A stretch of DNA of 64,000 nucleotides from the IMG/VR virus record IMGVR_UViG_3300033143_006101, positions 1 to 64,000 of that record; one strand, given 5' to 3'. Below, in pieces: positions 3,711 to 52,217 of this stretch. The position numbers and the translations under genes are program-made. The notes under the pieces are model-generated. The model worked only from the letters and a program-made list of their open reading frames with translations, had not been told where the DNA came from and searched no databases. Positions within the stretch are counted from its first letter, which is position 1. Every line of letters starts with the position of its first letter.

Positions 3711-4247
3711 ATGAGTAAGGTTAAACAAGTTATAGTAGTAAGAACAGATTTAAAAATGAGAAAGGGTAAATTTGCGAGTCAGGTTGCCCATGCTGCATTA
3801 AAAATATTTTTTGACAGACTAACTCTTTTAGGATCTAGAGAAACTGCTGTATTACTTACTCATTGGGGTTGGAATGAAGTAGAATTTCAAGCCAGGTTAA
3901 GAATAACAGAACCTATGATGAATTGGATGAATAAAGATTTTATTAAAATAGTAGTTGGATGTGATTCATTAGAAGAACTATTAATGATACAAAGGCAAGC
4001 TGAAGAAGAGCGTATCATTAATGCTATTATAGAAGATAATGGTGTAACTGAATTTAAAGAAAAAAATAAATGTCAAGTTTGTGAAGGAACTGGAATGATT
4101 ACTGTTCAAACTGTTACTGGATTGTGTGTGGAATGTGATGGTGAAGGATATATACGAATTAATAAACCAACTATTACTTGCTTAGCATTAGGACCCGATT
4201 TAGCTGAAAAGCTTGATAAAATTACTGGCAATTTAAAATTACTGTAA
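3711..4247 (+). CDS. pth2: peptidyl-tRNA hydrolase Pth2 with an inserted CxxCxGxG zinc-finger pair
   Basis: KQVIVVRTDLKMRKGKFASQVAHA, KIVV, IEDNGVTEF and TCLALGP...LDKITGNLKLL. Confidence 0.9.
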   Translation: MSKVKQVIVVRTDLKMRKGKFASQVAHAALKIFFDRLTLLGSRETAVLLTHWGWNEVEFQARLRITEPMMNWMNKDFIKIVVGCDSLEELLMIQRQAEEERIINAIIEDNGVTEFKEKNKCQVCEGTGMITVQTVTGLCVECDGEGYIRINKPTITCLALGPDLAEKLDKITGNLKLL

Positions 4248-4829: not shown

Positions 4830-5048
4830 ATGAATGACTTTGGGGATGTAAAGATTTGTACATGTTGTAAAGAACCTAAACCGATTTCTCAGTTTCATAG
4901 AACTTCCAGGAAATATACGCATAAAAAAAGTGGTGAGGCTTTATTATATACGTATCATCATGCAAAATGTAAGAAGTGCAGAAACGATCAAAAGGAGGAA
5001 TGGATTGTCAAAAAAAACAAAAAAAATAGAAAGAAAGTCAAAGCGTAA
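4830..5048 (+). CDS. small zinc-ribbon protein (CxxC...CxxC)
   Basis: KICTCCKEPKPISQFH...CKKC; upstream AGGAG. Confidence 0.55.
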   Translation: MNDFGDVKICTCCKEPKPISQFHRTSRKYTHKKSGEALLYTYHHAKCKKCRNDQKEEWIVKKNKKNRKKVKA

Positions 5049-5379
5049 GCTTTTATTTTCTGTAACTAAAAAAGATTTAGAAATATCTTATTTCTCTGGA
5101 TCCGGGGCTGGTGGGCAACATAGAAATAAGTCAAAAAATTGTGTACGTATTAAACATTCTGATTCTAGAGTAGTTGTGATAGGCACAGAACAGCGTAGTC
5201 GTGCCCAAAATAAAAAAACTGCTTTTAAGCGATTAGTAAATCATGTTGATTTTAAAAATTGGTTGAAATTTACTTCTTTAAAAAAGAGTCACAATTGGAA
5301 AGAAATAGAAAAAGAAATTAATGCTTGGGTAGACGAACAGATGAAAGAAGAAAATTTAAAAATTGAATATGGAGTATAA
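5005..5379 (+). CDS. release-factor-like GGQ peptidyl-tRNA hydrolase (ArfB/PrfH-like)
   Basis: SGAGGQHRNK...VRIKH...EQRSRAQNK; likely TTG start at 5005 after AGGAGG (ORF track starts at 4930). Confidence 0.85.
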   Translation: MSKKTKKIERKSKRKLLFSVTKKDLEISYFSGSGAGGQHRNKSKNCVRIKHSDSRVVVIGTEQRSRAQNKKTAFKRLVNHVDFKNWLKFTSLKKSHNWKEIEKEINAWVDEQMKEENLKIEYGV

Positions 5380-7512: not shown

Positions 7513-7671
7513 ATGGATAAAGAACATATGTTATTAGTTTTAGGTGGCGTTGTGCTCATAATAGTAATAATCGTAGCAAACTTTAAATATCCTTATTCTC
7601 AAATAAACCATAAAGGTCGTATAGATGGTTTAGAAAAACGTATGGAGACATTGGAAGAAAGGATTAGATGA
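7513..7671 (+). CDS. small membrane protein
   Basis: Start at MDKEHMLL after AAGGAG; one TM helix plus coiled-coil tail. Confidence 0.55.
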   Translation: MDKEHMLLVLGGVVLIIVIIVANFKYPYSQINHKGRIDGLEKRMETLEERIR

Positions 7672-8015
7672 AATTAGCTATTGTAGGCTCAAGAAATTTT
7701 AAGAGTTTTAGGAAAATGTATTTAAGCATTCAAAAATTAATGGAAGTTTCTGATATAGAATTAATTGTTTCTGGAGGAGCCAAAGGTGCAGATACACTTG
7801 CTGAGCATTTTGCTGATATGTATAATATACCAAAAAAGATATTTAAACCAGATTGGAATACATTCGGTAAAAGGGCAGGCTTTCTTAGAAATAAAGACAT
7901 AGTTGATACAGCCGATCAAGTAATAGCATTTTGGGATGGAAAAAGTAAAGGTACCAAATCAACTATTGATTTAGCAAAGGAACAAAATAAATTATTAAAA
8001 ATAATAAATATATAA
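7668..8015 (+). CDS. DUF2493/YspA-like SLOG family protein
   Basis: AIVGSRNF, IVSGGAKGAD, AGFLRN, AFWDGKSKGT. Confidence 0.85.
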   Translation: MKLAIVGSRNFKSFRKMYLSIQKLMEVSDIELIVSGGAKGADTLAEHFADMYNIPKKIFKPDWNTFGKRAGFLRNKDIVDTADQVIAFWDGKSKGTKSTIDLAKEQNKLLKIINI

Positions 8016-8026: not shown

Positions 8027-8311
8027 ATGAAAGTATTAGGAGATGCAGTTTTAGTAAGAGAAGAGGAGCCTGATGAGGAAAAAAAAGTAGGAAGTCTTTA
8101 TATTCCTCCCAGTGTTGAACATGTTCTTTGTTATGGAACAGTAGTATCTGTAGGAAGAGGGGTTATTTCTGCAGGGAAAATAGTTGGTTCAGAATTATCA
8201 GAAGGAGACAGAATAATGTTTAATGCTCATACTAAAGTACCTATGGAAATTGAAGGAGAAGAAAAAAATCTTTTTCTGATTAAAGAAAATCAAGTATTAG
8301 CAATTTTGTAA
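8027..8311 (+). CDS. groES: co-chaperonin GroES-like protein
   Basis: LGDAVLV, GSLYIP mobile loop, GTVVSVGRG, EGDRI, IKENQVLAIL. Confidence 0.85.
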   Translation: MKVLGDAVLVREEEPDEEKKVGSLYIPPSVEHVLCYGTVVSVGRGVISAGKIVGSELSEGDRIMFNAHTKVPMEIEGEEKNLFLIKENQVLAIL

Positions 8312-8321: not shown

Positions 8322-9128
8322 ATGATACTTAAACCAGGATCAGTACCAGAACCATTTGAAATGTTTACAGAACATCGTCCTTGGGGATATTATGAAAGAT
8401 ATGGAGATAATGTGCATTGTACACCTAAGATTCTTTATGTTAAAAAGAATGAGATGCTTTCAATGCAATACCATTTCAAGAGAGACCAATTTTATCTTGT
8501 ATTAGATGATCATTTTATTGTAGAGTATAGTAGTAAGCCTATTCCTGTTGAAATATTAGATGAACCAAATGAAGCAAAGCGTTTCGCAGAAGTAGAGCAA
8601 TTTTTAAAAGATCATTTGATAGTTACTACTGGATTTGTAGGATCTAAGTTTGGATTTAAGAGGCATGTCATTCATAGGGTAACTTACGTAGGAGAACAAG
8701 AAACAGGTAAGATTTTTGATCTGGCTTTTGGTGTTAATGATGAGACAGATATTGTTAGAGTAAAAGATGAGTATGGAAGAGAGAGCAAAAAGTTAAAATA
8801 CTATGATAAGACTTGTCTTTTTGACATTATACAAGATAAAGTCAGAAAAGACCTCCAATCTCCAGCTATTCTAATAATAAAACAGGAAAGAGAGCAAAAT
8901 TATGGTAATATTTTAGATAATTTTCCTACTGCAAAGCAACAAATACTGTATGATTTGCAAAAAGAAGGATATGCTCTTATTAAATTACCAGCAGAACTGG
9001 ATGGATCGGCGTTTTTTGCAAAATTACAACCAAAGTATACTAATGAATCTTTAAGTTTTATCTTAATGAATGAAAAAGGGGAAATAGTAAAATATTTTCC
9101 TCAAGATACGTTTGGAACAATCAAATAA
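8322..9128 (+). CDS. cupin resembling the type II mannose-6-phosphate isomerase C-terminal domain, with an unknown C-terminal extension
   Basis: RPWGYYE, LSMQYHFKR, HRV, DIVRVKDEYGR. Confidence 0.7.
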   Translation: MILKPGSVPEPFEMFTEHRPWGYYERYGDNVHCTPKILYVKKNEMLSMQYHFKRDQFYLVLDDHFIVEYSSKPIPVEILDEPNEAKRFAEVEQFLKDHLIVTTGFVGSKFGFKRHVIHRVTYVGEQETGKIFDLAFGVNDETDIVRVKDEYGRESKKLKYYDKTCLFDIIQDKVRKDLQSPAILIIKQEREQNYGNILDNFPTAKQQILYDLQKEGYALIKLPAELDGSAFFAKLQPKYTNESLSFILMNEKGEIVKYFPQDTFGTIK

Positions 9129-9213
9129 GCTGCGGTGGTGAAATTGGTAGACACATCAGGTTTAAGCCCTGATGCCCTTTAGTGGCATGGGGGTTCAACT
9201 CCCCCCCGCAGTA
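9129..9213 (+). tRNA. tRNA-Leu(TAA)
   Basis: Type II cloverleaf; TCAGG-TTTAAGC-CCTGA; GGGGG-TTCAACT-CCCCC. Confidence 0.9.
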
Positions 9214-10151
9214 ATGCTTTCTAATTCTTTTCGTGTAATAGTTCTGGTTCCAAATTTTTTAACTACAATACTTGCAGCTTTATTGGCGAGTTTAGTACAT
9301 TTGTGTATTGGGCAACCTGATGCTAAAGTAACTGCTAATATTGCTATTACAGTATCACCTGCTCCAGACACATCATAAACATCCTGGGTTTCTACAGGTA
9401 AATGGATGCATTTTTTGGATGAGATTAAACTCATACCTTTGGAAGATCTTGTAATTAAGAGATATTGGAAGCCATATTCTTTAATAATTTGTCTTCCTAA
9501 AGTTTCTATTGCAGTATCATTGTTATCCACTTTTTTATTAACAAGTGTGGATAACTCATTTAAATTTGGGGTTACAATGTAAGCTTTTGTATATTTAGAC
9601 CAATCTGTTCCCTTTGGATCCACAATGGTTTTTTTATTCCAAGTTATTGCTACTTTAATTATATATTGGCATAAATCATCATCAAGTAACCCCTTATTAT
9701 AATCAGATAGTATTACACATTCAAATTTATTTATATTATCAAGAACTTGATTTCTTATTGTTTTTTTTATTGCAGTTGTGGGAGGTGAATAATCTTCTGT
9801 ATCTATTCTAACTATTTGTTGATATTGAGCAACTATTCGCGTTTTAGTTATTGTAGTACTTTGAGTATCATACAAGGAGTAATATATGTTTCTTTCCTCT
9901 AATAGCTTTTTTAAAATGGATCCATAGTTATCTTTCCCAATTAGTCCTATTAAATAAGGATGGGCATGGACAGATGCAATATTATCAGCTACATTTGCTG
10001 CTCCACCCGGGTTTTGTATTATTTTATCTACTTTAATAACAGGAACGGGTGCTTCAGGGGATATTCTATCAACATTACCTATGTAATATTGATCTAACAT
10101 AGCATCCCCGATAATTAATACTGTTGCATTGGAAAAGTTTAAGTTTTTCAT
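9195..10151 (-). CDS. rfaE1: D-glycero-D-manno-heptose-7-phosphate kinase (HldE/RfaE domain I, PfkB family)
   Basis: IGDAMLDQYYIGNVDRISPEAPVPV, GGAANVA, LSDYNKG, VDPKG, TPNLNE, DVSGAGDT. Confidence 0.92.
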   Translation of the reverse strand: MKNLNFSNATVLIIGDAMLDQYYIGNVDRISPEAPVPVIKVDKIIQNPGGAANVADNIASVHAHPYLIGLIGKDNYGSILKKLLEERNIYYSLYDTQSTTITKTRIVAQYQQIVRIDTEDYSPPTTAIKKTIRNQVLDNINKFECVILSDYNKGLLDDDLCQYIIKVAITWNKKTIVDPKGTDWSKYTKAYIVTPNLNELSTLVNKKVDNNDTAIETLGRQIIKEYGFQYLLITRSSKGMSLISSKKCIHLPVETQDVYDVSGAGDTVIAILAVTLASGCPIHKCTKLANKAASIVVKKFGTRTITRKELESITAGGS

Positions 10152-10191
10152 ATCATGTTTTTTTTGAGTAAAAAATATTACATATTACATG

Positions 10192-10218
10192 ATACTTAAA
10201 ATAGATGAAATTTTAAGG
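10192..10218 (-). promoter_or_regulatory. putative phage late promoter driving rfaE1 (CCTTAAA-N16-GTAT)
   Basis: One mismatch to the motif found upstream of structural operons; same 16-nt spacer. Confidence 0.5.
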
Positions 10219-10255
10219 TAAAAAATAGTAGTTAAAAAAGAATATAACTCCATTT

Positions 10256-10282
10256 CCCTAAATTATATAAAAGATCTTCTAT
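10256..10282 (+). promoter_or_regulatory. putative phage promoter CCCTAAA-N16-CTAT
   Basis: Motif copy in the divergent intergenic region. Confidence 0.55.
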
Positions 10283-10322
10283 CATTTAATATGTTTATAA
10301 AGTACAAATAAGGGGGATAATC

Positions 10323-10616
10323 GTGTCAATTTTGAATTGCTTTGATTGTACATATAATAAAATAGGAGCTGAATGCACCCATCCAAAAAGTAGTTCACGT
10401 AAATATGATGAAAACCAGTATCACTGTACATTTTTTAAAGAAAGAAAAAAAGCAAATCTTACAGTAGTAAAATGTTTAGAATGTACGTATCATGAACCAG
10501 CTGATTGTAAACATCCTAAAAATACCCCAGCTAATTTTTTAAATTTTTGGTATAGAACTGGCGATAAAGAATGTAATTACTTTAAGAAAAAAAATGATGT
10601 TTTAGTACGACAATAA
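10323..10616 (+). CDS. Cys-rich protein with two internal repeats
   Basis: CxxCTY...CxHPK...CxxFK occurs twice. Confidence 0.6.
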   Translation: MSILNCFDCTYNKIGAECTHPKSSSRKYDENQYHCTFFKERKKANLTVVKCLECTYHEPADCKHPKNTPANFLNFWYRTGDKECNYFKKKNDVLVRQ

Positions 10617-10635
10617 ATAAGAAAGATGGTATAAA

Positions 10636-10896
10636 ATGAATGATATAATTAATGCTTTATTTGAATTAGGTGGTGCTATTCTAACATGGTTTAATGTAAA
10701 GAAAATCCTAAAAGATAAAGAAGTAAAAGGTGTATATTGGCCTATTTGGTTATTCTTTACAAGCTGGGGATATTGGAATTTATATTATTATCCCAGCGTA
10801 GATCATCAATGGAGCTTTTATGCTGGCATATTATTAGTATTTGGTAATACGGTATGGGTTTCATTAGCATGGTATTATAATAGAAAGCAGAAGTAA
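10636..10896 (+). CDS. PQ-loop/SemiSWEET-like 3-TM membrane protein
   Basis: Three hydrophobic segments; KDKEVKGVYW loop. Confidence 0.5.
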   Translation: MNDIINALFELGGAILTWFNVKKILKDKEVKGVYWPIWLFFTSWGYWNLYYYPSVDHQWSFYAGILLVFGNTVWVSLAWYYNRKQK

Positions 10897-10921
10897 TTTA
10901 GATTTGATTTTTTATACATAT

Positions 10922-10992
10922 GGGTCGGTAGCTCGAAGGACGAGCAACGGGCTTTTAACCTGTAAGCGAGAGTTCGATTCTCTCCCTGCCTA
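10922..10992 (+). tRNA. tRNA-Lys(TTT)
   Basis: ACGGG-CTTTTAA-CCTGT; GAGAG-TTCGATT-CTCTC; one acceptor-stem mismatch. Confidence 0.8.
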
Positions 10993-10996
10993 ATAA

Positions 10997-11069
10997 CTCT
11001 CCGTAGCTCAGTAGGAAGAGCATCTGCCTTCTAAGCAGATTGTCACAGGTTCGAGCCCTGTCGGAGAGG
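10997..11069 (+). tRNA. tRNA-Arg(TCT)
   Basis: CTCTCCG/CGGAGAG acceptor; TCTGC-CTTCTAA-GCAGA. Confidence 0.92.
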
Positions 11070-11081
11070 CATGGAGAAAAA

Positions 11082-11267
11082 ATGGAGTTAAGAACATTTA
11101 TAGACATGCCCATTCTTAACACACAACAAATAGATTCTATGTCTAATGAAGAATATAAAAAGTTGTGCGAAAGGGGTAAACATAAGATTAAAGAAAGTTA
11201 CTGTCATATTGGAGAAGATATTATGGATGTAATTGTAAAAGGCAGAAACTTTGATAGATATGCTTAA
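11082..11267 (+). CDS. hypothetical protein
   Basis: Start MELRTF after GGAG, downstream of the tRNA. Confidence 0.5.
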   Translation: MELRTFIDMPILNTQQIDSMSNEEYKKLCERGKHKIKESYCHIGEDIMDVIVKGRNFDRYA

Positions 11268-11273
11268 ATAACT

Positions 11274-12060
11274 ATGAGACCGGAAAATATGTATAATTAC
11301 CCAAAATATTTTTATGGAGTAATCTATAAGATTACAAACATTCAAAATAATAAATGTTATATTGGAAAAACTTCTAATGTATACTTTAAAAATATATTAG
11401 AAGTCATTTTTATGAGGCACTAAAAAAGAGAGATAACAATAAGAGATATTTTTATAATACTATAAGAAAATATGGAAAAGAAAATTTTAAAATAGAAATT
11501 TTAGGTTTTTGCTATTCTGAAGAAGAGTTATATGAATCTGAGATTGAATGTATAGCTTTTTATCAAAGTAGTAATTCACTTTATGGATATAATTTAACAA
11601 AAGGTGGGGATGGTGGAGATTTAAGATGTAATTTTTCTGAAGCAGATAAATTAAAATGGAGAAAAAAGATAAGTAAAGCAACAAAAGAAAGAATACCGTG
11701 GAATAAAGGATTAACAAAAGAAACGGATAAAAGAGTATTAAAAAGTAGTAATACGATGAAAAAGCATGTGCGAACAAAAGAACATTGTGAAAAAATTAGT
11801 AAAGCTATTAAAGGTAAAAAAAGATCAGATGAAATAAAAAAGAAAATGTGTGAGGCACACAAAAAAAAATACGGAAATGGTTTTTTTGGAAAAAAACATA
11901 CTAAAAAACAAAAGAAAAAATGAGTTTATTACGAAAAGGAAAACCGAGTAAAAGAAAAGGAAAAATGCATGAGGAGATCTTTGGAAAAGAAAAATCGAAA
12001 GAAATAAAAGAAAAGATAAGAAGCACACTTTTAACTAAAAATTCTAAAAAGGTAGAATAA
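11274..12060 (+). pseudogene. frameshifted GIY-YIG homing endonuclease with NUMOD3-like repeats
   Basis: GVIYKITN...CYIGKT, then after a shift near 11390: IRKYGKENFKIEIL...GYNLTKGGDG...PWNKG...FFGKKHT; second shift near 11915; absent from the ORF track. Confidence 0.8.
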
Positions 12061-12061
12061 T

Positions 12062-12619
12062 ATGGAAGAGACCTTAGTTTTAAACACAGGATATATTCCT
12101 ATTAGAATTGTATCGGATCGTGAGGCTATTTGTCTTCTTTATCAATCAAAAGCTTATACTGTAATTGAAACTGATCGTGTAATGCGTTCACCTTCAATTG
12201 TATTTAAAATACCATCCGTAATTGCTCTTGTAGGATATAATAAATTTCCACAAAGGAAAGTTGGATTTTCTAAATTGAATATAATTTATCGTGATGATAT
12301 GACTTGTCAATATTGTGGAAAAAGATTTAACATGAATGAACTTACAATAGATCATGTTATCCCAAGAAGTAGATGGGCAGATGAAAAAAGAACAAATAAG
12401 AAAAATTGGACAAATTGGCTTAATTGCGTCTGTTCATGTAAATGGTGCAATAATGCAAAAGGGAATAAACTTCTTCATGAATTAAGATGGAGTTTACCTA
12501 GAAAACCTTTTGAACCAAAATATCTGCCTCATATTGTTATTTCTTTCGATAAAGCAGAAAAAAAAGGTTGGATCCCATTTTGCAAATTTAATGTAAAATT
12601 ACTGAACAGACTTTCATAG
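12062..12619 (+). CDS. HNH endonuclease (McrA-like)
   Basis: TLVLN...RDDMTCQYCG...TIDHVIPRSR...CSCKWCNNAKG. Confidence 0.9.
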   Translation: MEETLVLNTGYIPIRIVSDREAICLLYQSKAYTVIETDRVMRSPSIVFKIPSVIALVGYNKFPQRKVGFSKLNIIYRDDMTCQYCGKRFNMNELTIDHVIPRSRWADEKRTNKKNWTNWLNCVCSCKWCNNAKGNKLLHELRWSLPRKPFEPKYLPHIVISFDKAEKKGWIPFCKFNVKLLNRLS

Positions 12620-12874
12620 GAGGACAGTAATGAGGGATAGATATTATAGTGCAGATGATTTTGTAGAAGACATTCTTGACATAGCGTCAGATGTTTTTGA
12701 GATTTTTATTGATATAAGTTTAGGTATCATAGGTCTTGCGTTTAATGACTTCTAAGAATCTAAAACATAGAAGCGAAGATAGTATTATTGGTTCATTTTT
12801 ACTTATTTTAATGGTAGCATCTGCAGTAGCTTTAGTTATTGCTTGCGGATATCTATTATTTAATGGGTAAATAA

Positions 12875-12946
12875 GCCCCTGTAGCTCAGTGAAAGAGCAC
12901 ATGACTACGGATCATGGTGTCGAGGGTTTAAATCCTTCCAGGGGCA
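12875..12946 (+). tRNA. tRNA-Arg(ACG)
   Basis: GCCCCTG/CAGGGGC acceptor; CATGA-CTACGGA-TCATG. Confidence 0.88.
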
Positions 12947-12959
12947 CAGGTATATTATA

Positions 12960-13250
12960 ATGAGACCGGAGATTAAAATTATGAAACTATATAAATGTAG
13001 GTGTATGATAATCCCTGAAGAGGAATTAGAAATACAAGAATATAAAGAAGGAGCTTTAAAAGAAAAGTATTGTTGTGACGGCTGTGATGCTTATTTTTAT
13101 CCTTGTAACCTCTTCAATTACTTTATGTATTATCTTGGTAAACCTTTTGGGTATGAAGCTTGGGGTTTGAACGAAATGCTGACTTGGAATGATATAGAAT
13201 GGTGGTTAGTAAAAATAAAAGTAAGAATAGAAGAATTTTTTAATAAGTGA
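12960..13250 (+). CDS. hypothetical protein
   Basis: ORF between tRNAs. Confidence 0.5.
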   Translation: MRPEIKIMKLYKCRCMIIPEEELEIQEYKEGALKEKYCCDGCDAYFYPCNLFNYFMYYLGKPFGYEAWGLNEMLTWNDIEWWLVKIKVRIEEFFNK

Positions 13251-13319
13251 CCGTAGCTTAATTGGTAAAGCATTCGGATGATAACCGAAGGAGCGAAGGT
13301 TCAATTCCTTCCGGTCGCA
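13247..13319 (+). tRNA. tRNA-Ile(GAT)
   Basis: GTGACCG/CGGTCGC acceptor; TTCGG-ATGATAA-CCGAA. Confidence 0.88.
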
Positions 13320-13328
13320 ATAAAATAG

Positions 13329-13357
13329 TTGATATAGTCGAACTTACTGTATATATT
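13329..13357 (+). promoter_or_regulatory. sigma70-like promoter TTGATA-N17-TATATT, probably giving a near-leaderless transcript of the HNH gene
   Basis: Canonical spacing; ATG at 13367 lies 9 nt after the -10 box with no Shine-Dalgarno. Confidence 0.5.
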
Positions 13358-13366
13358 AAATTTAAA

Positions 13367-13907
13367 ATGTATAGAAGGTTCGAATCTATAAAAAACACTA
13401 GAAGATTAAATGGTTATATTGTTATATATAAACCAGATCACCCCAAAGCAATGACATCCAAAAATTGGGAGGGTTATATTTACGAGCATATAGTGGTTGC
13501 TGAACAAATATTAGGTCGAAAACTGACAAGTACCGAGGTTACACACCATGAAGATGAAGTAAGTTCAAACAATAGTCCAAGTAATTTAAAAGTTTTTAGA
13601 ACACGAGGAGATCATAATAGATACCATAAAGGATTTGAAATTATTAGATTATCAGATAGTACGTATTAATGTAGTATTCATTCCTGCATAGATTGTGGTA
13701 AAGAGCTTTTTAAAGTAAAAATTACTAGATGTTGGGAATGCCATAAAATTTGGAAAGCAAAAAACATACCTTCAAAAAAGGTTTTAGAAAAGTTAATTTG
13801 GAAAAAACCAACAGTATATATAGCAAAGGATTTTGAAGTTTCAGACAAGGCAGTAGAAAAATGGTGTAAGAAGTATAATCTTCCAAAACCCCCAAGAGGT
13901 TATTAGA
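13367..13907 (+). pseudogene. HNH homing endonuclease with in-frame stops (HNH + zinc finger + HTH tail)
   Basis: YIYEHIVVAEQILGR...HH...NNSPSNL; frame continues past TAA at 13667 as CIDCGK...CWEC...AKDFEVSDKAVEKWCKKYNLPKPPRGY, then TAG where W is usual. Confidence 0.75.
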
Positions 13908-13923
13908 TGAAACATAAATATAA

Positions 13924-14000
13924 GGGTTCTTAGCTTAGCTGGTCGAAAGCACTTGACTCATAATCAAGAGATTTCCTGGGTTCGAATCCCAGAGAGCCCA
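13924..14000 (+). tRNA. tRNA-CAT (Ile2/lysidine type or elongator Met)
   Basis: GGGTTCT/AGAGCCC acceptor; CTTGA-CTCATAA-TCAAG; TTCGAAT. Confidence 0.88.
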
Positions 14001-14016
14001 ATATTTCATAATGGTT

Positions 14017-14057
14017 AATCCCGGCATTATTCTCGACATAATGTCGGGATTTTTTTT
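14017..14057 (+). terminator. rho-independent terminator closing the tRNA region
   Basis: AATCCCGGCATTAT-loop-ATAATGTCGGGATT followed by a T run. Confidence 0.85.
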
Positions 14058-14064
14058 ACTTATA

Positions 14065-14091
14065 CCTTAAATTTATGAAAATTCCGACTAT
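14065..14091 (+). promoter_or_regulatory. putative phage late promoter CCTTAAA-N16-CTAT
   Basis: Directly after the terminator, at the start of the structural region. Confidence 0.65.
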
Positions 14092-14123
14092 TATTTTATT
14101 AAAATTTTGAGAGAGGTATAGCT

Positions 14124-14267
14124 GTGTATTTTAAAAACTTTAAAGATTTAGGTCAGTTATTAAAAAAATCGGATGATTTGGGGTCAAAAAATCTCGAAGA
14201 GGAAGAGATGGAAGAAGCCTGGACTGAAGGTCCAGCAAAATCACAACAATCTAAGGAGCCAGCATAA
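14124..14267 (+). CDS. small acidic protein (47 aa, not in ORF track)
   Basis: GAGGT Shine-Dalgarno, GTG start, MYFKNFKDLGQLLKKSDD... Confidence 0.55.
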   Translation: MYFKNFKDLGQLLKKSDDLGSKNLEEEEMEEAWTEGPAKSQQSKEPA

Positions 14268-14268
14268 T

Positions 14269-14514
14269 ATGAAACTTAACAGCAACACAATTTTACTAGA
14301 TTCAAATGATGTACAGAAACTTATAGGTATCGCGGAAAATATTGCAAAAGAAAATAATGTATATAATGTAAAAGATGTAGAATTTGCTTTGGATCCAACA
14401 CGAGGAAACGTTAGTTTTTCAACTCAGCTACCTCCAAAAGAAATTACATCAATGTATAACAAAGAAAGGACAAAAGAAGATAAATTACAAGAGTTAGCTA
14501 ATATAGTAAGATAA
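14269..14514 (+). CDS. hypothetical protein
   Basis: Start MKLNSN after AAGGAG (track ORF at 14173 is over-extended). Confidence 0.55.
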   Translation: MKLNSNTILLDSNDVQKLIGIAENIAKENNVYNVKDVEFALDPTRGNVSFSTQLPPKEITSMYNKERTKEDKLQELANIVR

Positions 14515-14515
14515 G

Positions 14516-14887
14516 ATGCCAAGAAAAGTTAAAACTATAGGAAATGATTTACCATCTCCTAGTAGTAAGCATCAAGTTTTAGGAACTGTTTTTTTAGTAC
14601 AAGAAGGTACATCTACTGGAATTTATACTTTTAATTTTGAAGATGGTAGTATCATATACTTCGAAAATGAAATCAAACAATCTTTTGAATATCTTTTAGT
14701 GGATAACATAGGAGAAGGTAGAGTACGCTTCGCTTTTAATAAAATAGGTTTACCATTAGTTAGTTCAATAGACGGAGCAAAGACGTTGCGTGCCGGGGAT
14801 AGTTTGTATATCCAGGATTTTGTAAGAAATATCACTCTATTTTTTATAGAATCTTCTATTGTTGAATTAGTTTTAATGTCTAAATAG
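14516..14887 (+). CDS. putative small virion protein (one TSTG)
   Basis: Beta-rich ORF in the late operon. Confidence 0.5.
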   Translation: MPRKVKTIGNDLPSPSSKHQVLGTVFLVQEGTSTGIYTFNFEDGSIIYFENEIKQSFEYLLVDNIGEGRVRFAFNKIGLPLVSSIDGAKTLRAGDSLYIQDFVRNITLFFIESSIVELVLMSK

Positions 14888-15818: not shown

Positions 15819-18800
15819 ATGGCTATAATAACTTCAAAATACCATCAAGACTTAAATACAAGTTGTGGTATACATATCCCTCACTCGTTTGAATATGCTA
15901 CGTCTACTGGTAGAATAAATGCTACAGGATTAACTGCAGTAGATGTTTATAAATTAGCTCTGCAAAAAAGTGATGATACTTTATGGATTTTAACAAATCA
16001 TGGTCCTGTTACCTGGAAATTACTTGGTGGTGCTACTTGGGGTACTATTACTGGAACTTTATCCGATCAAACTGACTTGCAAGATGCTTTAGATGATAAA
16101 TCTGATACAACACATGGGCACACACATGCTTCTACTACCGGAAAAACAGCAAATGATCACCATAACCAACAGCATGCTATTGATGGGAGTGATCATACAG
16201 GCACATTGGATCACTCAGAAATAAACGACGATGAGAATACCAAGCATAGGATTATAAATGATGCAGATACGAGTGTTACTGAGTTATGGTCAGCTGATAA
16301 AATAAATACTGAACTCGGGACAAAAACTAGTACAGGTCATACACATGAAGAATCAGATATTACTGATTTAGATCATGATGCTCAAAAAATTAAGGGAGTT
16401 ATAGTCGATGACTCGGCCAAAGCGGATGGAAAGGTACTAACATATGAATCCTCAACTGGAGAGATAATATATGGTGATGTAGTAACTACTGATGAGAAGG
16501 TTAAGGCAAGTGCGGGTGATCCTACAACAGGATATTTAGATGCTAAAGTTGACAATGCAACTATAGAAATAAGTGCTAATAAATTAAAAGTTAAAGATAG
16601 TGTATTTTCAAGCACGGGCCATGCCCATACTGAATCGGATATAACAGATTTGGATCATTATGATAGTTCTGATTTCTCTACAGATTTTGGGAATGCCGAT
16701 CTTGCAAATCTTGGTACTAAAAACCACAGTGATCTTAATGATGATGAAGTCGCACAGCACCGTATTATAAATGATTCAGGAACTAGTGCTACTGAACTCT
16801 GGTCAGCTGATAAAATCAACGCAGAGTTGAATACTAAAACTTCAACTGGATATGTGTTAGATCAATTCACAGATATGAAAGAGCCCACCGGATTTCCCAA
16901 TAGAACAGATAGTACTATATCGTTCTCTGATTCAAGCCCAGACAGAACTTTTACTATTGCTCCGGCAGTAAGTACTTTTGACTACTATATTAAAGGAGTA
17001 AAGTATACAAAATCTGGTGCGGTGACACGGCAAATAACTGACGACGAAGGATTGCACTTTATATATTTTGATGGGGAAACCCTTACATCGACAACTACCT
17101 GGAGTGATATTCTTTTTACTGATTATGCCATAGCATCAATAGTTTATTGGGATGATGACAACAATTTACATGTATACTTCGCAGACGAACGACATGGCAT
17201 AACCATGGATGGGGCGATGCATAAACTGTGGCACGATATTATTGGATGTGCGTGGGAAGAAGGATTAGCTTTAGGAAACATGACTGTAAATGGTAGTGGT
17301 GATGTTAATAGCCACGCCCAGTTCTCTGTATCTGATGGAGAAATACATGATGAAGATTTGGAACATGAGATAGAAGATGGAAGTCCTCAGGATTTAAGTA
17401 CCATCGCACAGATACCTATTATGTATCGCTCTGGTGCTACTGGCGTATGGCGTATGAAAGCAGCAGATGACTTCCCAATCATATATGATGGGACTGCTGG
17501 TTATAATCCAACAGGTGGCAACGATAGAGTACCCTATAACGAATGGACTGGTAGTACTTGGCAACTCATAGAAGTAGGATCAGATAATGACTTTGTTCTC
17601 GTTCATTATTTTGCTACTAATGATACCGAACACCCTATTATTGGAATACAAGGGCAAGATGAGTATACAAATCTCGGCAATGCTAGAGAAGGTGCAACTA
17701 CCGAAATAAATAACCTAGTGACTTCAGGTCTACCAACTGCTGAGTTTACACCAATAGCTACATGTATTTTTCAAACTAATGATGACGGTTATACTAATAC
17801 TCCTCATGCAAAAATAAGAAGCACTGATACTGGAGATGATTATGTAGATTGGAGAGGTTCAAAATTATCTCAATCTGCGGGTACTAGCAGTCACCCAAAC
17901 CTATCTGAATTAGGCTTCGATGAATCAGGCCATAACGGATTCCAGAGAGAAACATATCAAGATACTTCTAATCCTGATGCAGACCATGATAGTGCAGATA
18001 CTAATGCTATAGGTATAAAATTCAGAGCAGGTGACTTCTGGGAAAACACAAGCACGGATATCGTATATATATGCCTTGATGCTACAGCTACTGCTGCAAT
18101 ATGGAACGCGATTGTAGATGTGAGTACAGGCCAAACTCTTACAAATAAAACTCTAACTACACCTACTATTGGCGACTTGACAAATGCTACACATGACCAT
18201 ACTGATAATGCGGGTGGTGGTGTTCTAAATCACTCAGACTTGAACGATGACGAAGCTACAAAACATAGACTTATAAATGACTTGGATACTTCCGCAACCG
18301 AGTTATGGTCCTCAGATAAGATTAATACTGAACTTGGGACAAAGACTTCAACAGGCCACACCCATACAGAAAGTGATATTACAGATCTCGATCACGATGC
18401 CCAGAAAATTAAAGGTGTTATTGTTGATGATTCAGCAAAGGCTGATGGGTACGGATTAGTTTATGAAAGTTCTACGGGAAATATTATATATTCGGCTAGT
18501 GCTGGTGGAACAGACAATAATGCTATTCATGACAATATAGCTGGCGAAATATCTATTATTACAGCAAAGAGTTCTCCGACAGGCTCAGATAAGCTTTTGA
18601 TAGAAGATGCTGCAGATACCAATAAAAAGAAGAGCATAGATATTCAAAATCTTCCACTTAGGCCATTGACCGATGCTTATATTTGGGTTGGGATCGGTGG
18701 AGTTGAAACAGCTGTACCTTTGGCTCATACTCATAACCATGCGACTGATATTACTAATGTTCTTCCAGATCAACATCATAATGAAGATCATCAGGCCAGA

Positions 18801-22245: not shown

Positions 22246-22284
22246 TTAAAAAGCCCTAAAGATACCTTCTTTAGGGCTTTTTAA
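22246..22284 (+). terminator. rho-independent terminator (potentially bidirectional)
   Basis: AAAAAGCCCTAAAGA-TACCT-TCTTTAGGGCTTTTT. Confidence 0.85.
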
Positions 22285-22332
22285 TAGATTTAAAAAATTA
22301 AGCATTTCCTTTACAATTTTGTACTTCAATCA

Positions 22333-28698: not shown

Positions 28699-28744
28699 TT
28701 TTTTAACAGTAATGTATTAAGAAAATGACTTGAGAGGTATAATT

Positions 28745-30106
28745 ATGGCATTAGGATATCAACTACCTGGAACAACAATAGAAGAAGTAACTAGTCCAGC
28801 TTCCGCGAATCCTACTACTACACAACGAATTCCTTGTTTTATAGGAGTAGCTAGTGATTATAAATTGGTAAGATATGAAGAAGTTGTAAGATCATCAACC
28901 GGTTTAATAGATAGTTTAGAATTTACCAGTGAAGGAATCTATGAAGTAGTGGAATGCGGTTCACAAAAAGGACTTGCAGATTATGTAGAAGGCACTCATT
29001 TTAATGTTGCAAGCAATCAAATAGTTTGGACTTCTTCTGGTATTGTTACTATAGGTGCAACATATTTCGTTACGTATAGGTATAACAGACCATCAAGTGA
29101 CTATAGCTATAAAGTATTTTATAATTATGAAGATATAGTTGCTGATTTAGGAGAAGATATACCAGACAATCCTCTTGTAAATATTGCAAAAATAGCTCTT
29201 AGATATTTTAGTAATCCCGCCATTGCCGTAGTACAAGTTCCAGCTACAGAAACTACCTCCGATTATGTAGATGCCCTTGATCTTGTAAAATATAGAGATA
29301 CACAAACTGTATGTGCATTAACAACTACTGTAGCAGTACGAGCTCTTCTTGTTTCTCATGTAGTAGAAAGAAGTTTACCAGATAATGGCAGATATAGAAT
29401 TACATATACAGGAGCACCAGCTAATACACCTGTAGGAACTGAAGATGATCCTAGTTCATTAAGAGGTATGGCTGTCGCAATTCAACAAGAAAGAGTTATT
29501 TTTGTCAATGCGACAAGAGCTAAATATTATTATAATGATCCAAATACAGGAGTAGAAACATATGCTGTAGTAGATGGAGCATTTATAGCTGCAGTTGTAG
29601 CAGCATTCAGAGATTCATTCTCTCATCCTACAACTACATTACTTAACAGGGTAATGCCTGGTATAGAATTGTATGATGAAGATTACGATGATTATTATGA
29701 TGAGAATAAACTAACTCTATCCGGTTCGAGCAGTTTATTTCTTATGGCTCCATCTGGAGGTTTAGTTCGAATCATAGATGATTTAACAACAGATAATTCA
29801 ACAGTAGAGCGTAATAATATTAACATCATTACAGCAAAAGATTATATTGCTAAAGATGTTGCTGTTCAAATGAATAGAACTTTTAAAGGTTCTCTAATTA
29901 AAAACAGACCTCAATATCAAGGAGTAGTTTTAAATTATTTAACTATATTATTTAAAGCTTATCTCCAAAACAATGTTATTGAGAATATAGGAACATTAAA
30001 AGTAACACTTCCAACTAATAGACGTGATACTGTAAATATTTTTTATAGTTACAGTGCTGTATATACACACAAGTATACTGAGGGTACATACACACTTGTA
30101 GTTTAA
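28745..30106 (+). CDS. contractile tail sheath protein
   Basis: YQLPGTTIEE N-terminus, IPCFIG, RIIDDLTT...NINII..KDYI C-terminal core; start MALGY. Confidence 0.85.
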   Translation: MALGYQLPGTTIEEVTSPASANPTTTQRIPCFIGVASDYKLVRYEEVVRSSTGLIDSLEFTSEGIYEVVECGSQKGLADYVEGTHFNVASNQIVWTSSGIVTIGATYFVTYRYNRPSSDYSYKVFYNYEDIVADLGEDIPDNPLVNIAKIALRYFSNPAIAVVQVPATETTSDYVDALDLVKYRDTQTVCALTTTVAVRALLVSHVVERSLPDNGRYRITYTGAPANTPVGTEDDPSSLRGMAVAIQQERVIFVNATRAKYYYNDPNTGVETYAVVDGAFIAAVVAAFRDSFSHPTTTLLNRVMPGIELYDEDYDDYYDENKLTLSGSSSLFLMAPSGGLVRIIDDLTTDNSTVERNNINIITAKDYIAKDVAVQMNRTFKGSLIKNRPQYQGVVLNYLTILFKAYLQNNVIENIGTLKVTLPTNRRDTVNIFYSYSAVYTHKYTEGTYTLVV

Positions 30107-47185: not shown

Positions 47186-47200
47186 TAAGGAGAAAATGAT

Positions 47201-47824: not shown

Positions 47825-47834
47825 GTGGTGCCAT

Positions 47835-49367: not shown

Positions 49368-49388
49368 CATAAAGTAGGAGAAAAATAG

Positions 49389-51128
49389 ATGAATAACTTT
49401 ACAAGTATTATAATAATTAATTGGAATGGGGTTCGATTTTTAACAACGGCTATTAGTTCTCTTTACAGATTCAGGAATAAAACTCCTTTTGAAATAATTA
49501 TAGTAGATAATGGATCCACAGATAAAAGTGTAAAGTATATAAAACGTATCACACATGAAAAATCAAATATAATAGCTATTTTTAATAAAGATAATAAAGG
49601 TTTTACAGTTGCTAATAACCAAGGAATAGAAGCTGCTACTGGAAAATATGTAATGCTTTTAAATAATGATATAGAAATAAGAGGCAGTGAATGGTTAGAT
49701 AAAATGATTAATTTTCTAATAATAAATCCAGAAGCAGGTGTAATAGGACCGCGTGGTGGAATTCTAACTAAAAGTTTAGAATTTATAGGCATAAAACCAA
49801 ATGAATATAATGGTATGGTAGATTATATCGAAGGATGGTGTTTTTTATTTAAAAGATCACTTGCTGAAAAAATTAAATTATGTCGTGAAGAACTATGGGA
49901 TATGAAAGCAAATTATCTATGTGAAGAAATGTTTATCTTTGCTGAAGATTCAGAATTTTGCCAACGTTCTAAAATGTTAGGACACGAATGTTATCAAATA
50001 GGTAACGTACCTATTCATCATTTTGGAAATTCCACTATTAAACATCAAGTAAAAGAAAATCCCGATGCAGATTACGATTATAAAGATGTAAGTAATGATA
50101 GTACTCAAATATTAAAAAATCTATTAAATAATAAACAATTAGTTAATACTGATATAAAAAAGATTTTAATAATGAGAGGTAATGCTAGAGGAGATGTTTT
50201 AAATACCACACCAGCTATAAAAGCATTAAGAAAAAAACATCCTGATGCTTTTATAGGTTTTGTTTGTTTTTATCCTTCTTTTGATATTTTAAATCTAAAT
50301 CATGATTTGGATTGTGTTTTTCCTGTTCTTGAAGAAACAATACATGGATTTCATCCAAAATTACTTCAGTTTGAATGGGATGAAATATATCATTTAGGAG
50401 ACAAAATGTTTCCAAGTATGAAGACAGTCATAGACCATTTTTACAATAGTGATGCAATAATAGATACTAAACATGAATTAATGGCTTCGCAGGATGTGAG
50501 TACAAGAATGAAAAGAGGAGCAGCAAAGAAACCTTATTCTAAGATTTTTGCTGAAATGATTAATATTGAATTAGATGATTTAAAACCTACTTTAAATATC
50601 AGCTCAAAAGTAATAAATGATGCCAAAAAGTTATTACAACATTTAGATAAAAAAAGAAAAACAGTAGCTTTATGTCTTGATTCTCATTGGATAACACGTA
50701 CTTACCCTATACCCAAAAGAACAAATATAATACATAGTTTATTAAAAGAATACAATGTAGTATTATTAGGAATAAGTAGTTATCGATTTAAAACACCTGA
50801 AGCTAATCATTTTGTTAATCTATTAAATCGAACATCAATAGAGTTATTATGTGCTATATTAAATCAAATTGATGCTATTGTTACAATAGATACATTAACA
50901 CTTCATATAGGTTTAGCTTATAAAAAACCAATGGTATCTCTATGGAATATAACAGAACCATTTCATGTAATGTCATACCAACCAAAGAATCAAATAAAAT
51001 TATTTTCGGATTTAGCATGTTCACCATGTTATTTAGAAGTCTGCACAAATCATAATTATGCTTGTTACAACCAACTCTTCCCAGAACGAATTGTAGATGC
51101 ATTACATTATTTAATAAAGGATAAATAA
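49389..51128 (+). CDS. GT2 + GT9 (heptosyltransferase-like) fusion
   Basis: N-term IIVDNGSTD, NKGF..ANNQG, LLNND, EDSE; C-term RGDVLNTTPAIKALRKKHPDA, TIDTLTLHIG, CSPC...C...C. Confidence 0.85.
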   Translation: MNNFTSIIIINWNGVRFLTTAISSLYRFRNKTPFEIIIVDNGSTDKSVKYIKRITHEKSNIIAIFNKDNKGFTVANNQGIEAATGKYVMLLNNDIEIRGSEWLDKMINFLIINPEAGVIGPRGGILTKSLEFIGIKPNEYNGMVDYIEGWCFLFKRSLAEKIKLCREELWDMKANYLCEEMFIFAEDSEFCQRSKMLGHECYQIGNVPIHHFGNSTIKHQVKENPDADYDYKDVSNDSTQILKNLLNNKQLVNTDIKKILIMRGNARGDVLNTTPAIKALRKKHPDAFIGFVCFYPSFDILNLNHDLDCVFPVLEETIHGFHPKLLQFEWDEIYHLGDKMFPSMKTVIDHFYNSDAIIDTKHELMASQDVSTRMKRGAAKKPYSKIFAEMINIELDDLKPTLNISSKVINDAKKLLQHLDKKRKTVALCLDSHWITRTYPIPKRTNIIHSLLKEYNVVLLGISSYRFKTPEANHFVNLLNRTSIELLCAILNQIDAIVTIDTLTLHIGLAYKKPMVSLWNITEPFHVMSYQPKNQIKLFSDLACSPCYLEVCTNHNYACYNQLFPERIVDALHYLIKDK

Positions 51129-51129
51129 T

Positions 51130-51462: not shown

Positions 51463-51465
51463 AAA

Positions 51466-52191: not shown

Positions 52192-52217
52192 ATGAGATGA
52201 ACTAAAAGGAGATTAAT

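What the first reader, a model, noticed from the sequence alone, without database searches (positions are those of the whole stretch)
9129..10218. Only credible minus-strand gene is a heptose-7-phosphate kinase with a late-type promoter, ending inside tRNA-Leu
Seen: the RfaE domain I gene is inverted relative to the whole window. It is preceded on its own strand by CCTTAAA-N16-GTAT, and its last codons and stop are antisense to the tRNA-Leu(TAA) 3' end (9195-9213). Established: this kinase acts in NDP-heptose synthesis, and GT9 enzymes use ADP-heptose. Inference: late-timed heptose donor supply for the GT9 domain at 49389, i.e. a heptose-containing virion glycan; probably acquired by insertion at the tRNA 3' end.
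Basis: partly seen in the sequence, partly recalled or inferred. Interest (0 to 1): 0.62.

Follow-up and report, generated by a model that had tools for sequence, protein, structure and literature searches.

The report
Lone heptose kinase in jumbo phage
A 253-kb tailed phage carries one intact bacterial-type heptose-7-phosphate kinase gene, backed tail-first into a leucine tRNA gene, which most likely helps the host make ADP-heptose for the phage's own heptosyltransferase; genes of this kind are already common in phages.

Summary
ORF 9195-10151 (-) is a bona fide RfaE-domain-I/HldA kinase (above NCBIfam's cut-off, all family-invariant residues kept). It is the only minus-strand ORF in the window with coding statistics. 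Its last five codons and its stop are antisense to the 3' end of tRNA-Leu(UAA). CCTTAAA-N16-GTAT exists 67 nt upstream.

The motif belongs to a real phage promoter class (CCTTAAA-N17-TANNNT), but the kinase site is its weakest member. 'Late' is unproven: the class precedes sheath, terminase and protease genes, and also a DNA ligase gene.

The complete 252,876-bp genome has no GmhA, GmhB, HldC or HldD equivalent, so the kinase needs host enzymes. The GT9 domain is real. It is fused to a GT2 domain inside a variable glycan island in the tail module, flanked by an SDR gene and a Maf-like gene.

An 88%-complete kin phage lacks both kinase and GT9. Among other viral records with such a kinase, 14 of 36 carry GT9, against 2 of 36 controls. 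The link to GT9 is therefore supported.

A virion glycan is plausible but not shown. Insertion at the tRNA by site-specific integration is not supported, and codon usage is fully phage-like.

Verdict: a new member of a known kind of phage auxiliary gene.

The parts
9195..10151 (-). [quoted passage not shown]
   Evidence: TIGR02198 368.4 bits > 345 cut-off and PfkB 141 bits. 2e-56 to HldA 4E84. Keeps all 65 invariant columns of 25 homologues, including the GAGD motif. Codon usage is phage-typical.
9129..9213 (+). tRNA-Leu (anticodon UAA), convergent with the kinase gene
   Evidence: ARAGORN; Rfam RF00005 55.2 bits.
9195..9213 (.). 19-nt antisense overlap: the kinase's last codons (T-A-G-G-S) and its stop lie opposite the tRNA T-arm and 3' acceptor strand
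   Evidence: Read directly from the sequence. The overlapped residues lie beyond the conserved domain.
10189..10218 (-). Promoter-class site of the kinase: CCTTAAA (10218-10212), 17 nt, TATCAT (10194-10189); the start codon is 38 nt further on
   Evidence: A core-defined member of a class of 15 sites. PWM score is only 16.7 bits. Its -10 region is a 14/15 inverted copy of that of the neighbouring strong site (I19).
10256..10285 (+). Back-to-back promoter-class site (CCCTAAA-N17-TATCAT) for the plus-strand gene 10323-10616
   Evidence: PWM 34.4 bits, 67 nt before the start.
49389..51128 (+). GT2 (residues 6-131) + GT9 (about 254-579) fusion glycosyltransferase, the presumed user of ADP-heptose
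   Evidence: PF00535 84.6 bits and PF01075 59.9 bits; heptosyltransferase I/II/III partial matches. The GT9-domain model has pLDDT 83.8, and the best folds are 3TOV, WaaF 1PSW and WaaC 2H1H. The same fusion occurs in other phage contigs.
46115..53180 (+). Glycan island in the tail module: SDR epimerase/dehydratase, TylF-like O-methyltransferase, two weak GT/sulfotransferase-like ORFs, the GT2-GT9 fusion, a small deaminase-like ORF, a SAM methyltransferase and an MptE-like (Maf/PseD-like) protein
   Evidence: It lies between the baseplate wedge gene (43354-44817) and tail-fibre-like genes. In kin phage G002 the same flanks enclose a different 17-kb cassette.

Best explanation
The gene encodes an active HldA-type kinase that converts D-glycero-D-manno-heptose-7-phosphate to the beta-1,7-bisphosphate. 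It is the only step of the ADP-heptose pathway that this complete 253-kb myovirus-like phage encodes. It can therefore work only by feeding into host GmhA (upstream) and host GmhB and HldC (downstream), raising or maintaining ADP-heptose during infection. The consumer is most likely the phage's own GT9 domain, which is fused to a GT2 domain in a variable glycan cassette inside the tail-gene module. The most probable acceptors are virion (tail or baseplate) proteins. Transcription starts from a weak member of the phage's own two-block promoter class, arranged back to back with a strong one, and the gene is packed against tRNA-Leu so tightly that its non-conserved tail and stop codon are read from the antisense of the tRNA. 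Shown: enzyme family and intact motifs; absence of the other pathway genes; the GT9 domain and its context; the promoter-class core; the overlap; the co-variation of kinase and GT9. Inferred: dependence on host enzymes, flux to GT9, the acceptor, and the timing.
For: Kinase identity and integrity. Lone step: no rfaE_dom_II, CTP_transf_like, SIS_2, SIS, Histidinol-ppas/Hydrolase_like, NTP_transferase or NTP_transf_3 in the 100%-complete DTR genome; the single SDR is not HldD (47 bits against 274.6). GT9. Link between kinase and GT9: both are present here and both are absent from kin phage G002, which is 88% complete with a sheath 73% identical. Among 36 other viral records of 38 kb or more with an HldA-like kinase, 14 have GT9, against 2 of 36 GT2-bearing control records (Fisher p = 0.0013), and none of the controls has the kinase. 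Kinase and GT9 lie tens of kilobases apart in another large phage too (G021), and GT9 plus kinase without HldC or GmhA recurs (G029, 79% complete). Virion context: the island lies between baseplate wedge and fibre-like genes. The same fusion sits next to MptE-like and methyltransferase genes in L024 and directly before prohead protease and sheath in L027. The island contains a Maf/PseD-like domain known from flagellin glycosylation. Promoter.
Against: No expression, protein or glycan data exist, and no sequencing run could be listed. The host is unknown, so its possession of gmhA, gmhB and hldC is assumed. A host with HldE already has this kinase, so the benefit of a second copy is unexplained. 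22 of 36 kinase-bearing viral records show no GT9 (many are fragments), so the kinase also serves other ends in phages. The co-occurrence test is not corrected for relatedness of the records, and the kin comparison is a single pair with an 88%-complete genome. Some GT9 members may use other donors (background knowledge). The kinase lies 39 kb from the island on the other strand. The promoter site scores within the range that shuffled genomes reach somewhere in 506 kb.
Confidence: 0.5

Rival explanations
1. Host-envelope remodelling: kinase and GT2-GT9 act on the host's lipopolysaccharide or another envelope glycan during infection (for example to block superinfection or to stop progeny sticking to debris), as is usually assumed for the heptose genes of cyanomyoviruses. 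The virion is not glycosylated.
For: Cyanophage records annotate carbohydrate kinase, nucleotidyltransferase and phosphoheptose isomerase clusters. 22 of 36 kinase-bearing viral records have no GT9, so they must feed host transferases. The GT2 half matches a GtrB-like O-antigen-conversion PHROG. The nearest folds of the GT9 half are the LPS enzymes WaaF and WaaC.
Against: The island is embedded in the tail module and, in other phages, next to head and tail genes. It carries a Maf/PseD-like protein-glycosylation domain. The cassette varies between kin phages while its flanks are structural genes.
Confidence: 0.22
2. DNA hypermodification: the transferases put heptose-containing glycans on hydroxymethylated pyrimidines of phage DNA, and the kinase supplies the sugar.
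For: Phage gene clusters that add mono- and di-heptose to 5hmC have been reconstituted, and such clusters are reported near structural genes (bioRxiv 10.1101/2023.12.21.572611). The genome has a thymidylate-synthase-like ORF at 599-2404 and a small deaminase-like ORF in the island.
Against: There is no Tet/JBP dioxygenase. The thymidylate-synthase match is below Pfam's cut-off and interrupted by a LAGLIDADG domain, with no PDB relative. The heptose-adding cluster in that paper used a HAD/APH-like enzyme, a cytidylyltransferase and a T4 beta-GT-like GT-B, none of which is found here. The methyltransferases here are of sugar or small-molecule type (TylF, UbiG-like).
Confidence: 0.1
3. Unlinked passenger: the kinase is a moron-like gene in a mobile, endonuclease-rich tRNA segment with no functional tie to the GT9 island. 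It may be of marginal use or may act on another sugar phosphate.
For: It lies 39 kb from the island on the opposite strand. It lacks a Shine-Dalgarno sequence, as do 61 of 163 long ORFs. It has the weakest promoter site of its class. The whole 9129-14515 segment, with HNH and decayed GIY-YIG genes, is absent at this place in G002.
Against: All family-invariant residues are kept and codon usage is fully adapted, which argues for long retention under selection. A near-identical copy exists in a second sample (99.99% over 8.6 kb). Kinase and GT9 co-vary. The score is above the equivalog cut-off for heptose-7-phosphate kinase.
Confidence: 0.13

Closest known systems
HldA of Burkholderia cenocepacia (PDB 4E84) and the kinase domain of bifunctional HldE (RfaE domain I, TIGR02198)
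   Same: Full-length alignment with the same N-terminal RISPEAPVP and GGAANVA motifs, the GAGD catalytic motif and the same length. The score is above the family cut-off.
   Different: Best identity to any cellular homologue is 47-51%. It is encoded by a phage, stands alone, and has no neighbouring gmhA, gmhB or hldC; bacterial stand-alone HldA genes sit beside a GmhB-HldC gene and an SDR gene.
Heptose-pathway auxiliary genes of T4-like cyanophages (e.g. P-SSM2, S-CAM1)
   Same: A phage-borne PfkB kinase of the heptose pathway in a large myovirus.
   Different: Only 26-29% identical. The cyanophage kinases are clustered with a nucleotidyltransferase and a phosphoheptose isomerase, whereas here the kinase is the only pathway gene.
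LPS heptosyltransferases WaaC/WaaF and the Veillonella GT9 protein 3TOV
   Same: The GT9 half of the 579-aa protein has the same GT-B fold (Foldseek E 6e-15 to 1e-12) and passes the Pfam GT9 model.
   Different: It is fused behind a GT2 domain, encoded in a phage tail module, and only 13-16% identical to these proteins. Its acceptor is unknown.
Bacterial autotransporter heptosyltransferases (TibC, AAH)
   Same: They are GT9-like enzymes that put heptose from ADP-heptose on proteins (PMC4358343), a precedent for protein heptosylation.
   Different: TibC ranks below WaaF and WaaC in the fold search. There is no N-terminal beta-barrel. The C-terminal Cys cluster (C-x2-C-x4-C-x6-C) has different spacing from TibC's Cys-339/342/358/370.
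Flagellin glycosylation islands with Maf/PseD proteins, and mycobacteriophage virion glycosylation
   Same: A variable set of sugar-modifying genes and transferases next to the genes of the structure that would be decorated, with an MptE-like (Maf) domain present. Phage capsid and tail-tube glycosylation is documented (Freeman et al. 2023, as cited in PMC12619734).
   Different: No nonulosonic-acid pathway genes were looked for or found. The Maf-like match is partial (54 bits against a 670 cut-off). No glycan has been observed.

Membership tests
HldA / RfaE domain I heptose-7-phosphate kinase (TIGR02198) | Score above the curated equivalog-domain cut-off over the full model | tested here: met
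   368.4 bits against 345; model positions 4-313 of 315.
HldA / RfaE domain I heptose-7-phosphate kinase (TIGR02198) | PfkB-fold catalytic and nucleotide-binding motifs intact (GAGD, N-x-x-A-A, N-terminal SPEAPVP lid) | tested here: met
   All 65 invariant columns of 25 homologues are kept; alignment to 4E84.
HldA / RfaE domain I heptose-7-phosphate kinase (TIGR02198) | Phosphorylates D-glycero-D-manno-heptose-7-phosphate at O-1 | not testable with these tools
   Needs an enzyme assay or complementation.
Self-sufficient phage ADP-heptose pathway (GmhA + HldA + GmhB + HldC, optionally HldD) | Isomerase, phosphatase and adenylyltransferase encoded together with the kinase | tested here: not met
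   No match at E <= 1 for TIGR02199, PF01467, PF13580, PF01380, PF13242, PF00483 or PF12804. TIGR01656 gives only a 12-bit hit with stops. The genome is 100% complete with DTR. The only SDR scores 47 bits against 274.6 for HldD.
Glycosyltransferase family 9 | Pfam GT9 model above cut-off and a GT-B fold nearest to known GT9 structures | tested here: met
   PF01075 59.9 bits against 22; the top nine Foldseek hits are 3TOV, 1PSW, 2H1H, 6DFE, 2GT1 and 2H1F chains.
Glycosyltransferase family 9 | Conserved catalytic Asp in the N-terminal G-D motif and the D-x-x-x-x-H donor-site motif | tested here: inconclusive
   G24-D25 and D257/H262 (domain numbering) are invariant among 10 fusion homologues. 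Their equivalence to WaaC residues rests on memory, not on a residue-level superposition.
Glycosyltransferase family 9 | Uses ADP-heptose as donor | not testable with these tools
   Inferred from family membership and from the co-occurrence with the kinase.
Bacterial autotransporter heptosyltransferases (BAHT) | [quoted passage not shown] | tested here: not met
   The N-terminus is a GT2 domain. The Cys spacing differs. TibC ranks 13th or lower, at E 6e-8.
Phage promoter class CCTTAAA-N17-TANNNT | Both boxes at exact spacing, 46-108 nt before a same-strand ORF, in intergenic DNA | tested here: met
   It is one of 15 core sites, 67 nt before the ATG. The full-length PWM score is low: 16.7 bits against 29-39 for the clear members.
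Late promoter | Active only late in infection | not testable with these tools
   No RNA run could be listed. Genes behind the class include sheath, terminase and protease, but also a DNA ligase and an A1-like phosphoesterase.
Element integrated site-specifically at a tRNA 3' end | Direct repeat of the tRNA 3' end at the far junction, and an integrase | tested here: not met
   There is no second copy of the last 22 nt with up to 3 mismatches in the window, no flanking repeats, and no integrase among the neighbouring genes scanned.
Phage DNA sugar-hypermodification cluster (Pyle et al.) | 5-methylpyrimidine dioxygenase (Tet/JBP) or a clear dNMP hydroxymethylase together with a DNA glycosyltransferase | tested here: not met
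   There is no PF12851 match. The thymidylate-synthase-like ORF scores 19.5 bits against 24.3 and is interrupted.

The most novel reading that the evidence does not exclude
This phage lineage carries, inside its tail-gene module, a swappable glycan cassette held between a conserved SDR gene and a conserved Maf-like gene. This would be a viral counterpart of flagellin glycosylation islands. In this phage the cassette builds a methylated, heptose-containing glycan on tail or baseplate proteins through a GT2-GT9 fusion enzyme, and the distant kinase is the precursor gene matched to that cassette. In addition, the convergent kinase transcript may run antisense through tRNA-Leu(UAA) and couple the levels of the two RNAs.
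Probability: 0.3. Interest if true: 0.7.

Novelty: new member of a known kind. Interest (0 to 1): 0.4.

Why it matters
Heptose-pathway genes in phages are usually filed as generic 'LPS auxiliary genes'. In this phage the kinase can be tied to a specific consumer, a GT9 domain in a glycan cassette that differs between related phages while its structural-gene flanks stay the same. If the acceptor is the virion, this would extend phage self-glycosylation, so far documented mainly in mycobacteriophages, to heptose and to jumbo phages of uncultured hosts, and it would give a simple genomic marker (kinase plus GT9). It also shows that a phage may keep only one step of a four-step pathway, which raises the question of which step limits ADP-heptose supply in an infected cell.

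Tried and rejected
(1) Transcript evidence: no public run holding the region could be listed, so neither read laying nor any start-site mapping was possible.

(2) Cupin as a GmhA substitute. The neighbouring 268-aa protein (8322-9128) has a weak type-II mannose-6-phosphate-isomerase cupin match (27.7 bits), and that chemistry would fit sedoheptulose-7-P isomerisation. I rejected it as part of the system because homologues exist in phages without kinase or GT9 (L005/G001; G002).

(3) BAHT-like protein heptosyltransferase: rejected. The C-terminal Cys cluster is shared by most of the fusion homologues but is spaced differently from TibC's.

(4) Site-specific insertion at the tRNA: there is no att-like repeat.

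(5) Recent transfer: composition is fully phage-like. The best cellular relatives are only 47-51% identical. The best named ones are Spirochaetes and Margulisbacteria MAGs at 43-46%, and other viral kinases reach 42% or less. No donor can be named, and I built no tree.

(6) Intrinsic terminator after the kinase: none found.

(7) Host inference.

(8) The closest carriers of the GT2-GT9 fusion (L024, L025, L026, L027) could not be searched whole for the kinase, because those records are not held.

(9) The large representative-protein search, the complex prediction and the second structure job were not used, because the family scans left nothing open that they would settle.
Full report
WHAT THE WINDOW IS. 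The window is the first 64 kb of a 252,876-bp virus record with direct terminal repeats, rated 100% complete. It encodes a tail sheath (28730-30106), a baseplate wedge subunit (43354-44817) and tail-spike or fibre-like proteins. Elsewhere in the genome are a large terminase and a prohead protease. It is therefore a jumbo myovirus-like phage of about 32% GC. Cultured relatives are only remote: Bacillus phage G, Mycobacterium phage Phabba and virus Rctr197k. The host is unknown. A near-identical fragment (99.99% over 8.6 kb, including the kinase) occurs in a second sample.

THE OBSERVATION.
- ORF 9195-10151 on the minus strand encodes 318 aa.
- It scores 368.4 bits on TIGR02198 (rfaE_dom_I, cut-off 345) and aligns end to end with the solved HldA of Burkholderia (4E84, 2e-56).
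- In an alignment with 24 stand-alone homologues it keeps all 65 invariant columns, including the SPEAPVP lid, GGAANV and the GAGD catalytic motif.
- tRNA-Leu(UAA) at 9129-9213 is called by ARAGORN and by Rfam at 55 bits.
- The ORF's last five codons (T-A-G-G-S) and its TGA stop are the antisense of the tRNA's T-arm and 3' acceptor strand, a 19-nt overlap.
- These residues lie beyond the conserved domain. The tail after the conserved E-L is 8 residues, inside the 4-14 seen in most homologues. The gene is therefore not truncated or abnormally extended.
- A codon-usage model trained on the phage's long ORFs gives the kinase 0.30 (mean 0.33, sd 0.11), with GC 0.318, GC3 0.188 and a purine-rich sense strand, all typical of the phage.
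- Every other minus-strand ORF tested in the window scores 0.01 or less, and all but one are pyrimidine-rich, so they are shadows of the plus strand.
- 'Only credible minus-strand gene' is thus right for the window. Beyond 79 kb the genome has long minus-strand blocks.

THE PROMOTER MOTIF. CCTTAAA-N16-GTAT is present at 10218-10192 on the minus strand.
- A position weight matrix built from twelve clear sites, the kinase's excluded, converges on about 20 sites with the consensus (A)CCTTAAA-N16-CTATnATTT(T)A. Most lie 46-108 nt before a same-strand ORF start and score 29-39 bits. Shuffled genomes rarely exceed 18 bits.
- Defined by its core alone, CCTTAAA-N17-TANNNT occurs 15 times among the 48 CCTTAAA copies in the genome, against about 1.8 expected. 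Eleven of the 15 sit 46-108 nt before a same-strand ORF start, and the kinase site is one of them, 67 nt before its ATG.
- On the full matrix the kinase site is the weakest (16.7 bits). It has G where the others have C before TAT, and GTAA instead of the T-rich stretch.
- Two things speak for it being real. It is arranged back to back with a strong site (34.4 bits at 10256) that serves the plus-strand gene 10323-10616. The two -10 regions are also a 14/15 inverted copy of each other (TATCATGTAATATGT and TATCATTTAATATGT, pair I19).
- The class precedes the tail sheath, large terminase and prohead protease genes, but also an NAD-dependent DNA ligase and an A1-like phosphoesterase.
- Its second box is a sigma-70-like TANNNT, while its first box is unlike TTGACA. 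That architecture is as typical of middle-type or phage-sigma promoters as of late ones (the comparison is from background knowledge).
- 'Late' is therefore not established. No RNA data could be found.
- The kinase has no Shine-Dalgarno sequence, as is true of 61 of 163 long ORFs. No intrinsic terminator follows it.

THE PATHWAY.
- HMM searches of all six frames of the complete genome find no rfaE_dom_II, CTP_transf_like, SIS_2, SIS, Hydrolase_like, NTP_transferase or NTP_transf_3. Histidinol-ppas gives only a 12-bit hit containing stops. The positive controls ring in the control genomes.
- The only SDR (46115-47185) scores 47 bits on the HldD model against a cut-off of 274.6, and is a generic NDP-sugar dehydratase/epimerase.
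- The kinase is thus a lone step. ADP-heptose can only be made with host GmhA, GmhB and HldC.

THE CONSUMER. ORF 49389-51128 (579 aa) is a GT2 domain (84.6 bits) fused to a complete GT9 domain (59.9 bits, with heptosyltransferase I/II/III partial matches over residues 254-575).
- An AlphaFold model of residues 245-579 (pLDDT 83.8) is closest to the Veillonella GT9 protein 3TOV, WaaF and WaaC. TibC comes well below.
- The gene lies in a 7-kb island (46115-53180) between baseplate and fibre genes. The island holds an SDR, a TylF-type O-methyltransferase, two weak GT/sulfotransferase-like ORFs, the fusion, a small deaminase-like ORF, a SAM methyltransferase and an MptE-like protein that matches the flagellin-modification protein PseD.
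- The same fusion (36-64% identity) occurs in other phage contigs. In L024 it sits with methyltransferases, radical-SAM, GT1 and MptE-like genes. In L025 it sits with an SDR and methyltransferases. In L027 it lies directly before the prohead protease and upstream of the tail sheath.

COMPARISON WITH A KIN PHAGE. G002 is 217.7 kb and 88% complete; its sheath is 73% identical, and 115 of 361 proteins are shared. I fetched it whole.
- Its structural module is collinear.
- The island sits between the same SDR and MptE-like genes, but it is 17 kb long and different. It holds a radical-SAM gene with an intein, GT2, GT1, methyltransferases, a GDP-mannose-dehydratase-like SDR, a sugar-1-phosphate nucleotidyltransferase and a triple-GT2 protein.
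- G002 has neither GT9 nor the kinase.
- At the kinase locus, G002 goes from the cupin gene straight to the homologue of 14516-14887. Its tRNA array, including tRNA-Leu(UAA), lies elsewhere.
- So the whole 9129-14515 segment of this phage is absent from that place in the kin. The segment holds six tRNAs, the kinase, two HNH endonucleases and what looks like a decayed GIY-YIG endonuclease.

A WIDER TEST. At least 588 IMG/VR contigs encode an HldA-like kinase, so the kind is common.
- Of the 36 best-matching ones that are 38 kb or longer, 14 also carry GT9, 18 a CTP_transf_like domain and 6 a GmhA-like SIS_2 domain.
- In 36 control records chosen for a GT2 match and of similar or larger size, 2 carry GT9 and none carries the kinase. 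Fisher p is 0.0013 for GT9.
- The records are not independent and many are fragments, so this is support, not proof.
- A 98%-complete 241-kb phage (G021) has the kinase, GmhA, an HldC-like gene and two GT9 genes scattered over 100 kb. A 79%-complete one (G029) has the kinase and GT9 only, as here.

ORIGIN.
- The best cellular homologues are 47-51% identical and sit in ordinary bacterial contexts, for example beside a GmhB-HldC fusion, an SDR and GmhA.
- The best named ones are Spirochaetes and Margulisbacteria MAGs at 43-46%. The best viral ones reach 42%.
- With fully adapted composition, no att-like repeat and no flanking repeats, nothing points to recent or integrase-mediated insertion at the tRNA.
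- Residence in a variable, endonuclease-rich tRNA segment is what the data show.

INTERPRETATION. I rate as near certain that this is an intact heptose-7-phosphate kinase. I rate as likely (about 0.6-0.7) that it serves the phage's GT9 domain through host enzymes. I rate as the leading but unproven option (about 0.35-0.4 on its own) that the acceptor is a virion protein. Host-envelope remodelling, as assumed for cyanophage heptose genes, is the main rival. DNA heptosylation has a precedent, but its hallmark enzymes are missing here.

VERDICT. This is a new member of a known kind of phage auxiliary gene. The more interesting feature is the variable glycan cassette in the tail module, to which the kinase appears to be matched.

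Noticed in passing
window 46115-53180 and G002 (L112 8588 - L113 7567): A glycan cassette that differs completely between two kin phages (7 kb here, 17 kb there). In both it is held between the same SDR and MptE-like (Maf/PseD-like) genes inside the tail module.
   Followed up: partly
window 8322-9128: A 268-aa protein with a weak type-II mannose-6-phosphate-isomerase cupin match (LSMQYHFKRDQFY motif), convergent with the kinase. It is conserved in phages that lack the kinase, so it is probably unrelated to it.
   Followed up: partly
window 599-2404: A 601-aa thymidylate-synthase-like ORF (below Pfam's cut-off) interrupted by a LAGLIDADG domain. It has no PDB relative by sequence.
   Followed up: partly
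window 3711-4247 and 4930-5379: A PTH2-type peptidyl-tRNA hydrolase and an RF-1-domain (ArfB-like) protein inside the tRNA array, next to GroES-like (8027-8311) and SLOG (7668-8015) genes.
   Followed up: no
window 11274-12060, 12062-12619, 13262-13669: A GIY-YIG-like N-terminus and lysine-rich pieces spread over several frames, probably a decayed homing endonuclease, followed by two HNH endonuclease genes between the tRNAs.
   Followed up: no
window 15819-20942: A 1707-aa ORF with GC 0.39-0.40, against about 0.30 around it. It has almost no family match and no homologue in the kin phage.
   Followed up: no
window 52403-52432: The highest-scoring site of the promoter class (39 bits) lies inside the MptE-like ORF, 774 nt before the next gene start. 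It may be an internal promoter for the fibre genes.
   Followed up: no
window 10180-10194 / 10280-10294: A 15-nt inverted repeat (14/15) formed by the -10 regions of two back-to-back promoter-class sites in the 171-nt spacer between the kinase and gene 10323.
   Followed up: yes
L116 3400-3473 (kin phage G002): A tRNA with a CTA anticodon (amber-reading; ARAGORN labels it Pyl) in the kin phage. This phage's window has none.
   Followed up: no
G000 100226-117707 (outside the window) and window 22252-22290: Small hairpins carrying TAGGGCT in or beside the loop, just before Shine-Dalgarno sites of several genes at 100-118 kb. The same heptamer forms the stem of a classic terminator at 22252-22290.
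   Followed up: no
L113 3629-5707 (kin phage G002): A radical-SAM gene carrying an intein with a LAGLIDADG endonuclease, inside the kin phage's glycan cassette.
   Followed up: no
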